DNA of 64,000 bases from Botryllus schlosseri. Taxonomy: Eukaryota. The notes below the pieces were generated by a model that had not been told where the DNA came from, did no database searches, and saw nothing but the letters and a program-made list of their open reading frames with translations. Below are positions 12,801 through 18,800 of the stretch, one piece after another (positions within the stretch are counted from its first letter, which is position 1; every line of letters starts with the position of its first letter). The translations under genes and the position numbers were made by a program. The stretch covers positions 9,610,001 through 9,674,000 of the forward strand of contig CM119378.1 in assembly GCA_051294905.1 (NCBI GenBank), in the 5' to 3' direction.

Positions 12801-15800
12801 GAACGGTGGAATAGCTGGCAAAATAGAGTCAACGACTGCCACAGCCGGCTGATAAGCTAAAGGTGTAAAGAGAAGTAATAAAACTTTACAGCCTACTTAC
12901 CGATATATGATTCTCCGCCTCTGGAAAGGTCAGTCGCGTCGATGGATATGAGATAGTTTGAAGTTTTGCTTCTTTTTCGCTTTCTTCCGGCGAGCAAAAA
13001 TATCTGCGAAAACAGGATCCCATGAAAAAATGATTTAAAGTCATTTCCAATTTCCAATAATCCGCTGTGATGCTGGCATTTACTTTGTCATCGTGACTTT
13101 TGTTGAATCAGGCGGTGGAACAAGAAAGGTATTCCCCATATTGCTCGAGTAATAAAAGAGTGGCATACCTTTCGTCCATCTTCCCTTTCAAAATGAAGGT
13201 AGTACGTGGGGTACGCGTGTTTGTCCACCCCTCGCTTATCCCTGGTTATCCGACATTTCACAGTGAATCCCTGAACGTCGAAGGATTGAATAATGTCCGA
13301 TATTAACCGGGTATTTTCAAAGAAGAGAAGCAAAAGTCTCATGACTTGCAAACAATTTATGCATCACAGTACGATGATGGTTTTATCGCGTCTCTAAGAA
13401 CAATGTTGAAGTGTTTACAGTATACACAAGCACTAACACAGAACCGATCAAAAAGTATGATAAATGGCGGAAGATCAAATCCCAAGTGTCGTTTCATATT
13501 ACGAGACAAATATACTCCATAATTATGTACTGTGATGTCAAATAGTAAACTAGTATACAGACTGGCCGTGGCATCGATACTAACAGTTGGACTACACACT
13601 GACGGTATAGTTGCATTACAAAGAACACATATGCCTTTGCAGTTGGAAACTGATATTCATGAGGTGCCGATTTTACAGTCAGTAATATGAAACGTGTCAT
13701 GTGTCATATTTCCACAGAATGGTGTCTATCAGGGTTGTAATGACTCGAGTCACGAATTTCTGACGACTCGATTTGACTCGAGTCAATCTGTGTATTGAAT
13801 CGACTTGGATTCGAGTCATTACGCATGACTCGAACCAAGTCATATGACTTGAGACCGACATTTCATTGTAATTTCGAAGAATAGTAAAGTAACCACCCTA
13901 TTGGGATTTCGTCTATTGATATTGGTACTTGAAAATGCGACCAGATACTGTTGAAAGTGAGGAAAATTTGTATATTATAAATGCAAACCATTCGATATCA
14001 CCAAACAGAGTTAGAAAAGTGGCTTTACCAAAACTTTGACTGGAAACTGAGCAGTCAACACAATGACTCGGACTCGAGTCATAATACCACGACTCCCCTG
14101 CTCGATGATTGGACTCGGACTTGACTCGGTGGTGAATTGAAAATAACTCGACTTGACTCGAGTCAAAATTATAAAAGTGAGATTGACTTGTGACTCGGAG
14201 CCTTGTGACTTTGTCACAACCCGTGTCTACACAGGTATAATTATCTCCAACATGCGTTGTGTTCCATCCTCATACACTGTAGTGTGAGTACTTACTTGTG
14301 GTGCTGGGGTGTGGGCAAACTCCTCGAGGTTTTCAAGATCCATACCGGGCGGGCCATTTCTACCGCCACTGCTACCAGGTCTCATTTCATCAGGTGCAAG
14401 TTCCTGGCGAATAAGACGCAATTGTAGTAGGGTGAGTGTTACTGGACATTCAGTTTACATCACACTTGTTATTGTTCACTTTCAAAAATCTTATATCCAA
14501 ACGCACAAATCATTTTGGATAGTGTCAAGTCGGACATTGATCACACTACATACGGTCCAGAATACCAAACACCAATCATTACAGTTTGATACAGAATCAG
14601 ACTAAAAATCGATCAATTCAAATATTAAGAGGTAAGTGTATAGTTCATGAATGAATCCTGTTCGCATATATCACGGGTGGCCGATATGACAATCGTGGCT
14701 ATTACATAGCAAATTTCGGACCTCAAGTTGCAGGAACTAGGTGGCATCAATAAAAAAAAATTATTTGGAGTTTGAGATAACAGTTGTCGTACTTTTCCAA
14801 TTCGATTGCTTGTATTTTCTGAGTGTAAGGTACGAAAGAACATAGAAATCTAATCAAGGGCAAGCCGGCCAACAGGAGCGTAGGTCAGTTTCCCGGGTTT
14901 GAGGTCACACAATATCAAGCAATGTGCGGAATACATCCATTCGTGATTCGATTCAACATATTTATGCTGCTCATTATGTCTCAACTCAATCATCTCATTG
15001 ATTTGTTTGGCGAAATTATAAAGGGAATTGAAAGCCATTGATTTCTAGTCTTCATATTCAAAGTGGAAAATGAACTCTTCTTGAAATTGCTCCGTGTGTG
15101 TTTTATCAACTGGAGACATAAATTAGTTTGCAGTACAAGTGTCAGGACAAGGTACATTGTGGCATTTCTTCCGTTGATCATTGAAAAAGTTTACAATCAT
15201 ACATAAGTTGGCCACCCATGACATATATCATGTTTTCCGCAATTCGATTTTTACATATCTTGATCGCATGCATGCTACCAATTCAATCCTTAAAATCAAA
15301 GTGAAGCCAAGAAAATTAAGTCTTTTAACAGCGAATACTGCATAGCATGTAGGACACTGATTGCTTAAAGTATTTTCCCTCTGCTACTATGATATCTCAA
15401 AGGGACGGACGGATGAAATAAGCAATACCATTAAACCTAAATTTGCTTCATCAACAATGACACACATACTCGCAGACACATTTACATACAAAACTGCTGA
15501 TGAATAACTGATGAATAAAATTCTGCTGCATAATGAAAATGCTGACTTCTGTTACATTTGACACAAAAACTTAAAATGCCTGCCTCATACCTTGAATAGT
15601 CCCGTTGACTTCCTACTTGTCGAAAGAAAAGCTGGACCTGAAATTCTTGGAAATTTCTGGGTCACAAAAACTTTATAAATTCCATTCGCAGCGTCGCGGC
15701 GACTAGTATCCAATCTAGCTTTCTGCTCGATGGCTATAGCTTGACTATAAGAATCAAATATCTCTTTCTCCTCGCCCTTCAAAGCATCCCTGTACTGCCA

Positions 15801-18800
15801 ATCTTGCTGAAATTTCATCCACAGATCTTCCAAAATTTCAACGGTTTTTGACAGGGTTTTATCAGGTGACAAGATAGCACCGACGGCATGGATCGCAACG
15901 TTTGTTGATAAGTCCATTGTTCGATTAGCGCGAGGGGACCACAGAGTCAGTGATCTATGTTCTAAAACCAAAGATTGCAATTCTCCGCATAGGCACGTCA
16001 CAGTCTTATAGTCATCATTCTCCTCTCGAGCCGACTCTTCAATCGTAAATGCATCTGCATGCTTCTGCGATGTCTCTTTAGCTATTCTACTCTGTATCGT
16101 AATCAGGAAATATCTCAATTCCGCAATAATCTGCCAGACCTTTCGCTTTCTAGTTTTTGCTCCATCTGGAAAATATACCAACTGGTGAAATTTGGTCACA
16201 GGTTTCTGCCGCAATTTGTCTGCCCTGATTGACAATCCCAACAATGAACAAGTTTGAATAAGAAATTTGATTCTAATAATGACATATACAGCATTTTTAT
16301 TGAAGCTATGATCTCAAGCAATGGGGTCATGAAGTCACAGAACAGCTTCAGTTTTAGGTGAAATGAACACAACAATCCAGGAAATGCTTAACGATCGCCG
16401 ACAAATCCATGGCATCCGCGATCGAGTCTATCAAGTCTACCGAACCGACAAAGTAAGAAGTCCGGGCTTTGAATAAAATATCACTGTAAGCTCAGTTTCT
16501 AAGGAATTCTATTACCTTGTGATTGCTTGACGTCATGCGACACTAACTCTAGATCTTGATGAGCATCTGGGCACGGTAGGATCTCGGTTTGAGTTGAACT
16601 AAAACAAGCTAGAAATCCTGTACCATGTACACACTGTAGACACAGCAAACATTCACCCTATTACCTGACTATACTGGTGCCTTCAACACCTGGCAAAACG
16701 CACACTCCATCTTCGCTATTGTCCTCGTTGGTAACCCCACCCTGCACATACCGACTGCTACCTCGCTCAAAAGCATCTTCAACCTCTTTCTTATCAACTT
16801 GAACAAAGTCCTGCTTAACGGTTTTATCTGCTACGTTACAAGATTTCGAATTCGCTTCGCCTGAATCATCATCCTCTTCTGAAGACGACAAACTGAACTG
16901 ACATGTCTGGAACAGATTTTAGTGTAAGATGAATCACTTCAATAAGAAAGCAAACACAAAATCCCCTAAAAGACACAAATAATTCTCCATTAGTGTCTGA
17001 CCAATATCATGATGCAACTTCTTCCAACACGAACTTCTAATTAATGACTTATATCAAAATTTTTACTGAGACAGATATTGGTCTAGCTCTAGTCCCAGTC
17101 CCAACAGAGATCATTGTTTTGTGCAACTTAACTCTTTCCATTGTAAGATTACACGAAAAAATGCTAACCACTTAAATAAAATTTTGAATAAATAGAAATG
17201 TATGTGATTTGGAGGATGCGTTCCCACGACTGAAATATTGATCGTTATCACGAAACGCACAGCACACAACTGATCATAGCTTGCCACCAACGAAATAGTT
17301 CGAAGAAATATTTGTGATAACGAATGTGTCCTAAATTTGATAGTATTGAATAGTGTGAAGTATTTTGAACCATATACCGTAATTATACCCGTGTATTAAT
17401 AGAAAATGTTGGAAACCAGGAAAAATATTAAGATTACTCGAAAATGTTGACAATACTTTCATTAAGTGTCGAAGTGTGCAGTCTTAATATTCCAAAATAT
17501 AATAGGCTTAGATGTCATGATAAATAGGGATTACATCATACAATGAAACCATGTCTCATCACAAGATACAAGAACGTCAACCGAAAAAGGCCAGCAATCT
17601 ATCCGCTTGGCGAAACAACAAGCTTCAGTGTTAGCTCTCAAAATAAGTACTCCAATTGATTACAGATATTGTCAATCCTTTGTGAGACTGTGAAATTAAT
17701 ACAGAAGATTATAGTTATTCCTACCTCACGGAAAGAGCAGGGCCTATCATTAACGACCACAAAACTCACAATGAATATAGCTTAGTGGATAATTTACAAT
17801 GTATTTCATGTGAAAACAGGAACATTGGTGGGACAAGGTAGTAGGTAGGTTTCCATACATATCTAACCCAATGACTGGTTTGTCCTTAAGTTCCATTCAT
17901 AATATACAGGATACCAATGTAATGTGATGTGATAATCATCAAGTTATGTGATCTAGATACCATTTACCTTCACAATATTCAATATGACATTAGTCAATAA
18001 ACAAAGCTGGTTGAGATTTCGACAGGGTAAATTCACCAACCTATTAGTCATTGAAATGATATTGGCTGTAGGAACACAAAAATATTACTATCGATTTCAG
18101 AAGACAAGAATACAATGATTGGAGAGAAAACTACAATCAAATCAAAATCAAATCCCACGGGATGTACAAGAAGCATATCATTAAAAGACTACAACTCTAG
18201 ACACTACAATTCAAAACAGATTTTACATCTACCAGTCACATCTCTCCAACAATCATTCTAATGTCAACCCATCAAAATTTGTGAAATCACAGCATACCTC
18301 CGCAAGCACTAAATCTTACATATTCTGGTGCCGGGGCATCTTTAATGGCCGGATCAACCTCATACTCCGGACTGGGCGGCCTTTTATTTAAATACTCGAT
18401 AGTCGTTGATTCATCCCCCTTGCTATTAGGAATAGCTTCCAGGACAATCAAGTCAGATTCGTTATCTTGCAATTCGGTACGCACAAAAACGTTTGAGTCC
18501 CCAACCGACGATGGCGTTTTGGGGCTTTTGAGAGATTTTGATGGAGGGAACTGATTGGCCCAGCTTACTTTGCGGCTGTTGTTGGCCTGTATGGCACACA
18601 ATATTCAGATTTCAGCCTGTCGCCGAGAACATGTCACAAATTGATACAACCACAGATAGGCAAAGGAGAAAATCACTATACACAACCAATTTGACAGTAA
18701 AAATAACAAATAATTCAGATATATCCACCTGATACATAAGGATTTTAGCGTTTTAGCCCTTTCCACTGCTGTCATATCACTAAACCGACAAGATACAAAG

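What the first reader, a model, noticed from the sequence alone, without database searches (positions are those of the whole stretch)
15591..18586. Tubby gene carries an in-frame 3-exon, 381-aa insertion immediately upstream of the tubby domain
Seen: exons 18586-18320 (phase 0-0, Pro/Ser-rich), 16906-16665 (0-2, acidic SSSEEDDDS) and 16224-15591 (2-0) total 1143 nt and bridge exon 19730 (phase 0) to exon 14403 (phase 0). Skipping all three joins [13 protein letters not shown] to [23 protein letters not shown] and gives ~455 aa, the size and local sequence I recall for TUB/TULP3. The last two exons can only be used together. Inference: a lineage-specific, probably alternatively spliced long isoform (~836 aa).
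Basis: partly seen in the sequence, partly recalled or inferred. Interest (0 to 1): 0.7.

Follow-up and report, generated by a model that had tools for sequence, protein, structure and literature searches.

The report
Sea-squirt tubby gene's alternative middle exons
The extra exons in this sea-squirt tubby gene are real, conserved coding exons, but they appear to form two separate alternative inserts rather than one 381-residue insert: a short disordered one, and a long one carrying a helical domain with no known relative.

Summary
They are single-copy and spliced into tubby mRNA. The proposed gene structure is only partly right.

Contigs of public runs show these junctions:
- 19730>14403, which skips all the extra exons.
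- 19730>18586 and 18320>14403, so exon A is used alone.
- 16665>16598 and 16516>16165.

The long block is therefore exon B, a missed 83-nt mini-exon (16598-16516) and exon C starting at 16165, not 16224. It is 900 nt (300 aa) and in frame. No 18320>16906 junction was seen.

Predicted or assembled tubby proteins of Styela clava, Ciona intestinalis and Clavelina lepadiformis, plus two unidentified transcripts, fall into the same classes at this splice site:
- short;
- exon-A type only;
- long type, with an acidic linker and the helical domain, always without exon A.

The domain is about 160 aa in five helices (AF2 pLDDT 76). It is homologous across these species (hhalign 97%, E 3e-11). It has no Pfam, PDB or fold relative, and an RGS relationship is not supported.

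Expected sizes here are 489, 578 and 789 aa. The inserts are tunicate-wide rather than species-specific. They are already present in RefSeq as "uncharacterized protein" isoforms, and I found no paper describing them. The function is inferred, not shown.

The parts
19730..19860 (-). Constitutive tubby exon upstream of the alternative site. It encodes ...[35 protein letters not shown] and ends in phase 0.
   Evidence: Both boundaries come from run contigs and reads: a loose end at 19861 continues into the exon ending at 31189, and the donor at 19730 is used in three different joints.
18320..18586 (-). Exon A. It is 267 nt (89 aa), phase 0-0, Pro/Ser-rich and probably disordered, with the conserved motifs RKVSWxNQ(L/F)PP, NVFV and (I/V)(E/Q)YLN. 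It is used as a stand-alone cassette.
   Evidence: Joints 19730>18586 and 18320>14403 are seen in X1 contigs. Allele differences are 4 synonymous to 1 non-synonymous. Homologous segments are present alone in S. clava X3, Ciona 563-aa and Clavelina 587-aa proteins, and in the genomic contig L006.
16665..16906 (-). Exon B. It is 242 nt, starts in phase 0 and encodes an acidic Ser/Asp/Glu-rich linker that opens the long block. Its 5' junction was not observed.
   Evidence: The frame is open with AG/GT boundaries. The donor at 16665 is joined to 16598 in an X1 contig. An acidic linker precedes the helical domain in every long orthologue.
16516..16598 (-). It encodes (S)[27 protein letters not shown](D) and keeps B+mini+C' in frame (900 nt).
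   Evidence: Joints 16665>16598 and 16516>16165 lie in one X1 contig with CT..AC (= GT..AG) ends. The translation has no stop.
15591..16165 (-). Exon C', 575 nt, which encodes the helical domain and a basic tail. The donor at 15591 is spliced to the exon at 14403.
   Evidence: The acceptor at 16165 comes from an X1 contig. A loose end beyond 15591 reads as a divergent allele of exon 14403. Allele differences are 14 synonymous to 6 non-synonymous. The exon is single copy.
15660..16139 (-). Coding part of the orphan helical-bundle domain. In the exon C' translation the helices span residues 9-32, 38-75, 85-98, 104-125 and 131-168.
   Evidence: AF2 with the 9-sequence alignment gives pLDDT 76 and pTM 0.68. 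Homologues were found only in tunicate tubby genes.
16166..16224 (-). The frame is open, but no evidence shows it is exonic.
   Evidence: No joint at 16224 was seen. X1 and X16 coverage stops below 16165. Homologous ORFs P0001 and P0002 do not extend over it.
14296..14403 (-). Constitutive exon downstream of the alternative site. It encodes [36 protein letters not shown].
   Evidence: It is the acceptor of the joints from 19730 and 18320. Its donder side is fixed by loose ends that continue at 13270.
9856..13270 (-). Seven exons encoding the C-terminal Tub domain, ending at the stop codon.
   Evidence: Pfam PF01167 matches exon by exon. tblastn with the S. clava protein gives 75-96% identity. 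A spliced model has canonical sites throughout.

Best explanation
This is the single tubby (TUB/TULP-type) gene of an ascidian. The linker between its N-terminal region and its C-terminal Tub domain is an old alternative-splicing hub. Three protein classes are made between exon 19860-19730 and exon 14403-14296:
1. Short, a direct join, 489 aa.
2. A-form, 578 aa, which adds exon A: 89 aa of Pro/Ser-rich, probably disordered sequence with short conserved motifs.
3. Long form, about 789 aa, which adds exon B, an 83-nt mini-exon and exon C' (300 aa). This block is an acidic linker followed by a compact bundle of about 160 aa in five helices, found so far only in tunicate tubby genes.

Exon A and the long block behave as alternatives rather than as one 381-aa insert.

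Inferred mechanism: tubby proteins bridge PI(4,5)P2 membranes, through the Tub domain, to partners bound by the N-terminus. That is established knowledge of the family. On that basis, the inserts most likely add isoform-specific binding surfaces that change which partners or cargo the bridge engages in particular cell types. Exon A would add linear motifs. The long block would add a folded helical module.
For: Shown:
- Open frames and canonical splice sites.
- Exon C is single copy.
- Spliced joints 19730>14403, 19730>18586, 18320>14403, 16665>16598 and 16516>16165, plus the 15591>14403-allele continuation.
- Unitig depths suggest sample-dependent use. Cassette exons stand at about 8-22 against 41-45 for flanking exons in X1. 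In X3 only the skip form appears.
- Allele differences are mostly synonymous: 14:6 in exon C' and 4:1 in exon A.
- The domain's only sequence relatives among 1.84 billion cluster representatives are four proteins. One is S. clava XP_039253455.1, where the domain sits between the same flanking motifs and the Tub domain. Another lies on contig L006, in the order exon-A-like, domain, RPGSSGG exon, Tub exons.
- Short, A-type and long classes occur in Styela, Ciona and Clavelina, and two assembled transcripts also fall into them. All five long forms lack exon A.
- Domain homology across ascidian orders: hhalign 97.2%, E 3e-11.
- Helical-bundle model with pLDDT 76.

Inferred: the functional role.
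Against: - The 5' junction of exon B was not observed, so 19730>16906 is assumed from the orthologues, and 18320>16906 cannot be excluded.
- Two joints rest on short unitig sides (29-30 nt) in a run whose RNA status is only guessed. The GT..AG joints themselves argue that it is cDNA.
- In raw-read run X16, exon C' is covered at depth about 6 but exons B, mini and A have no reads. I attribute this to a divergent haplotype falling under the 95% likeness cut, since 24 of 33 reads were only 95-99% alike, but I did not test that.
- The orthologue isoforms from NCBI are predictions.
- No evidence bears on function. The homodimer prediction gave no verdict.
Confidence: 0.72

Rival explanations
1. One reading: exons A, B and C are normally included together as one in-frame insertion of about 381-389 aa, giving a single long isoform.
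For: Exon A is phase 0-0 and exon B starts in phase 0, so A+B+mini+C' stays in frame at 1167 nt with no stop. All the exons are covered in the same run, X1.
Against: No 18320>16906 joint was found, while 18320>14403 was. All five long-type tunicate proteins lack the exon-A segment, and the three A-type proteins lack the long block.
Confidence: 0.18
2. The long block is a separate nested transcription unit, or a transposon-derived ORF lying in a tubby intron, and not part of the tubby protein.
For: X16 reads cover exon C' more deeply than the flanking tubby exons, lie in both orientations, and leave exon B uncovered. The domain has no relatives in known families.
Against: It occurs once in the genome. 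A contig continues from 15591 into the next tubby exon. It holds the same position and frame inside tubby proteins of Styela, Ciona and Clavelina, and in an 850-aa ORF on a 3.6-kb assembled transcript. X16's strandedness rests on only about 4 flanking reads.
Confidence: 0.04
3. The cassette exons are splicing noise or non-productive isoforms with no protein function.
For: Inclusion was not detected in X3 or X12, where only the skip junction appears.
Against: The frames stay open, synonymous allele differences dominate, and both inserts are kept across three ascidian orders at 20-45% identity, with invariant residues in the helices.
Confidence: 0.04

Closest known systems
Vertebrate TUB/TULP1-3 and Drosophila king tubby (bipartite tubby proteins)
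   Same: The C-terminal Tub domain is 70-96% identical to other chordate tubby proteins. The acidic stretch, the GPRP motif and the N-terminal region are shared. The short isoform has the usual size, about 490 aa.
   Different: The non-tunicate proteins listed are about 480-550 aa and show no insert at this site. The tunicate gene can insert 89 aa or 300 aa, including a folded helical domain, between the N-terminal region and the Tub domain.
Styela clava LOC120330645 isoforms X1/X2 (XP_039253454.1, XP_039253455.1) and X3 ('protein king tubby-like')
   Same: It is the same gene with the same three-way choice at the same splice site. X1 and X2 carry the acidic linker plus helical domain, 31-32% identical to this window's. 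X3 carries only the exon-A homologue.
   Different: These are automatic predictions named 'uncharacterized protein'. The linker is longer and holds motifs (LPS/LPK, EGWT) that I could not find in this window.
Ciona intestinalis LOC100181434 isoform X1 (756 aa) and Clavelina lepadiformis LOC143450750 isoform X2 (890 aa)
   Same: Both are long tubby isoforms with a homologous helical core (helices 1-4) at the same position and without the exon-A segment.
   Different: The last helix ([14 protein letters not shown]...YKVFVT) is absent in Ciona and only partly present in Clavelina. Identity to this window's domain is only about 20%.
Generic three- to five-helix bundles (syntaxin Habc, FliS, designed bundles)
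   Same: The topology is up-down long helices. These give the best, though weak, fold matches.
   Different: Foldseek E is at least 0.2 and TM at most 0.44. VIA Z is at most 9.3, below the level of about 13 that means anything for helical bundles. There is no sequence relationship.

Membership tests
Tubby family (Pfam PF01167 Tub) | A C-terminal Tub domain of about 250 aa over the Pfam cut-off | tested here: met
   Four exon-wise matches lie at window 9877-13009, with scores of 35-64 bits against a cut-off of 27. The assembled model is 75-96% identical to S. clava Tub exons.
Tubby family (Pfam PF01167 Tub) | The cassette exons are part of the same mRNA as the Tub domain | tested here: met
   Exon A is joined on both sides to constitutive exons. 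Exon C' continues into the exon at 14403. The 850-aa ORF P0015 lies on a 3623-nt assembled contig that carries both the domain and Tub.
   It is not among the joints of four runs, while 18320>14403 is. Coverage was low, so absence is not proof. Orthologue long forms lack exon A.
   The observed joints are 16665>16598 and 16516>16165.
RGS domain (suggested by another first-stage note) | A sequence or fold match to RGS (PF00615, nine-helix RGS box) | tested here: not met
   No Pfam family appears at E up to 1 for exon C, or at E up to 0.1 for seven full-length orthologues. No RGS entry appears among the best fold matches.
Transposon-derived or repeated ORF | Several copies in the genome, or transposase-like domains | tested here: not met
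   There is one copy in 495 Mb. No Pfam match was found. The ESM Atlas hAT-like rows score 0.80-0.83, which is chance level.
Tunicate tubby helical insert (proposed here) | A homologous helical core at the same splice site in different ascidian orders | tested here: met
   hhalign gives 97.2%, E 3e-11 over 130 columns between the Styela-like set and the Ciona/Clavelina set. Five columns are invariant in all 9 sequences.
Tunicate tubby helical insert (proposed here) | Absence outside tunicates | tested here: inconclusive
   phmmer against 1.84 billion representatives found four hits, all of this gene. A profile search limited to 105-334 aa added none. No exhaustive profile search of full-length eukaryotic proteins could be run.

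The most novel reading that the evidence does not exclude
The helical module is a tunicate-born orphan domain. It would have arisen, perhaps by exonisation of intron sequence, in the stem of tunicates, and has been kept since as an optional third functional part of the otherwise two-part tubby adaptor. It would give certain ciliated or neuronal cell types a tubby variant with a different partner or cargo set.
Probability: 0.3. Interest if true: 0.55.

Novelty: new variant of a known kind. Interest (0 to 1): 0.38.

Why it matters
Tubby proteins are the adaptors that link PI(4,5)P2 membranes to the machinery that moves receptors into cilia. Their architecture, an N-terminal partner-binding region plus a Tub domain, is regarded as very uniform. 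Tunicates, the sister group of vertebrates, have a single such gene.

That gene can switch in a folded, lineage-restricted domain by splicing, which offers a natural experiment. One can ask what extra activity a tubby bridge can carry, which cells need it, and how a new domain becomes fixed inside an old gene.

There is also a practical gain. The finding corrects the exon structure for this genome, and it explains why RefSeq labels the long isoforms 'uncharacterized protein'.

Tried and rejected
- **Pfam.** Exons A, B and C and seven orthologues gave nothing beyond Tub and a weak Tub_N match.
- **ESM Atlas by features.** Scores were at most 0.86, which is chance level.
- **Fold searches.** Two AF2 models were searched against PDB, AFDB clusters, VIA-wide and Atlas. 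Only generic helical bundles came back.
- **PDB sequences.** A profile search found nothing below E 0.3.
- **Wider protein searches.** The S. clava domain region and the profile A1 found no further relatives.
- **Homodimer prediction.** The helical domain scored 0.14 against a mark of 0.32, so there is no verdict either way.
- **Hidden linker exons.** I looked between 19729 and 16166 for the LPK and EGW motifs of other species' linkers and found none.
- **Literature.** Searches for tubby with ascidian, Ciona or splice variants found no paper on these isoforms.
- **Antisense transcript over exon C'.** I considered this for the mixed read orientations in X16. I set it aside because X16's strandedness rests on about four flanking reads.
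- **257-nt 'joint' at 19134>19392.** Its ends are not splice sites and it is single copy, so it is an intronic insertion/deletion difference between individuals, not splicing.
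Full report
**What is in the sequence.** They are 18586-18320, 16906-16665 and 16224-15591. Each is bounded by AG and GT(A/R), and joined together they give 1143 nt without a stop. Pfam Tub (PF01167) matches exon by exon at window 9877-13009 on the same strand. The best protein matches are ascidian.

**Transposon, repeat or chance ORF?** None of these fits. The 211-aa translation of exon C matches the genome once, at its own place. Differences between the reference and the haplotypes in public runs are mostly synonymous. 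The counts are 14 synonymous to 6 non-synonymous in exon C' and 4 to 1 in exon A (from table 3). The apparent stop at 15910 in X16 arises only from scoring that change alone. The same reads also carry the change at 15909, and the two together make the codon TGG.

**Transcript evidence.** I laid two contig sets (X1, X3) and two raw-read RNA runs (X12, X16) on window 14250-19900. Every joint listed here has CT..AC ends on the plus strand, which is GT..AG on the gene strand.
- 14403/19730, the skip form: an X3 contig at depth 26, plus one X12 read.
- 18586/19730 and 14403/18320: X1 contigs. Exon A is therefore used as a cassette on its own.
- 16598/16665 and 16165/16516: one X1 contig.
- An X1 contig covering exon C' runs past 15591 into 26 letters that read ELAPDEVRP. 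This is a divergent allele of the start of exon 14403.

The long block is thus exon B (242 nt), an 83-nt mini-exon at 16598-16516 and exon C' from 16165 (575 nt). That is 900 nt (300 codons) with no stop. No joint was seen at 16906, so the upstream partner of exon B is not shown.

Unitig depths suggest that use depends on the sample. In X1 the cassette exons stand at 8-22 against 41-45 for flanking exons. In X3 only the skip form is seen.

Two caveats apply:
- X1's RNA status is only guessed, although its spliced joints argue for cDNA, and two of its joints have only 29-30 nt on one side.
- In X16, exon C' is covered at depth about 6, but exons B, mini and A are not covered at all. Most X16 reads were only 95-99% alike and most were laid only partly. 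I therefore think a divergent haplotype fell below the 95% cut in the less conserved parts. I could not test this because read laying allows a single call.

**Gene model.** All splice sites are canonical.
- The ATG is at 34701.
- Upstream exons: 34701-34682, 33664-33620, 33312-33234, 32978-32807, 31368-31189, 19860-19730.
- The alternative site follows.
- Downstream exons: 14403-14296, 13270-13169, 13003-12901, 11973-11825, 11763-11689, 10677-10590, 10134-10051, 9989-9856.
- Sizes: short 489 aa, with exon A 578 aa, with B+mini+C' 789 aa, with everything 878 aa.

**Relatives.** An exhaustive phmmer search of exon C against 1.84 billion cluster representatives gave only four hits.
- Three are ORFs on genomic contigs of other organisms, at 86%, 44-45% and 30-33% identity.
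- The fourth is Styela clava XP_039253455.1, 'uncharacterized protein LOC120330645 isoform X2'. Its domain sits at residues 208-402, between the same flanking motifs and a Tub domain.
- Contig L006 (8.1 kb) carries, in order, an exon-A-like ORF, the domain ORF, the RPGSSGG exon and the Tub exons. The arrangement is therefore syntenic.

A search with the start of the Tub region listed tunicate tubby proteins of distinct sizes. Reading them shows three classes at exactly this splice site:
- **Short:** a 502-aa ORF close to S. clava, Phallusia at 535 aa, and a 506-aa ORF.
- **Exon-A type only:** S. clava X3 at 600 aa, Ciona intestinalis at 563 aa, and Clavelina lepadiformis at 587 aa. They share RKVSWxNQLPP, NVFV and YLN-like motifs.
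- **Long type:** S. clava X1/X2, Ciona X1 at 756 aa, Clavelina X2 at 890 aa, an 850-aa ORF on a 3.6-kb assembled contig, and a 769-aa catalogue protein.

All five long forms go straight from the constitutive exon into an acidic linker and the helical domain, without the exon-A segment. A profile comparison of the Styela-like set (A1) with the Ciona/Clavelina set (A2) gives 97.2% probability and E 3e-11 over 130 columns. The core of the domain (helices 1-4) is therefore shared by the ascidian orders sampled. The last helix is present here and in Styela, is absent in Ciona, and is only partial in Clavelina.

**What the domain is.** AlphaFold2 with nine sequences gives pLDDT 76 and pTM 0.68. It places long helices at residues 9-32, 38-75, 85-98, 104-125 and 131-168 of the exon C' translation, followed by a disordered basic tail. 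None of the following found a relative:
- Pfam;
- PDB sequences;
- Foldseek on PDB and AFDB clusters;
- VIA-align across 48,000 chains, with best Z 9.3, below what is meaningful for helical bundles;
- ESM Atlas.

The 'faint RGS-like pattern' of another first-stage note is not supported. A homodimer prediction gave no verdict.

**Interpretation.** It is shown that the linker of the ascidian tubby gene is a conserved three-way alternative-splicing site. It is also shown that exon A and the B/mini/C' block are real coding cassettes, and that the long block carries an orphan helical domain restricted, as far as could be searched, to tunicate tubby genes.

The function is inferred. Tubby proteins act as bridges between PI(4,5)P2 membranes and N-terminal partners, which is established knowledge of the family. 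An optional folded module or motif-rich segment in the linker most plausibly changes partner or cargo choice in particular cells.

It is not what the data and the orthologues show.

**Novelty.** The long isoforms already exist in RefSeq as automatic predictions, but they are labelled 'uncharacterized'. I found no paper on them. This is a new, tunicate-wide variant of a well-known family, and it is neither a species-specific oddity nor a new kind of system.

Noticed in passing
window 19135-19391: An X3 contig lacks these 257 nt of the intron, and the ends (CA..AA) are not splice sites. The stretch is single copy in the genome, so this is an insertion/deletion difference between individuals, not a mobile element or an intron.
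   Followed up: yes
window 15590-16136 and 14375-14403: Haplotypes in public runs differ from the reference by about 4% within coding exon C' (23 of 547 letters). They differ by 5 of 26 letters at the start of exon 14403 (ELAPDEMRP versus ELAPDEVRP). This is very high polymorphism, or a mix of cryptic species under one label. It probably hides reads at the default 95% likeness.
   Followed up: partly
window 15573-16139 (run X16): Reads over exon C' lie in both orientations, at higher depth than the flanking constitutive exons, while exons A, B and the mini-exon have none. The cause may be an unstranded library plus a divergent haplotype, or an extra transcript. It is not resolved.
   Followed up: no
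window 19861-31188: The intron upstream of the alternative site is 11.3 kb. It holds several ORFs of 90-130 aa and a richer-GC stretch around 20-22 kb (0.455). I did not examine it, and it may contain repeats or another feature.
   Followed up: no
window 34682-34701: The first coding exon of the tubby gene holds only 20 coding nt (MYGGLQ + 2 nt), followed by GTATGT. The short N-terminal motif MY(G/A/T)GL is shared by all the ascidian tubby proteins read.
   Followed up: partly
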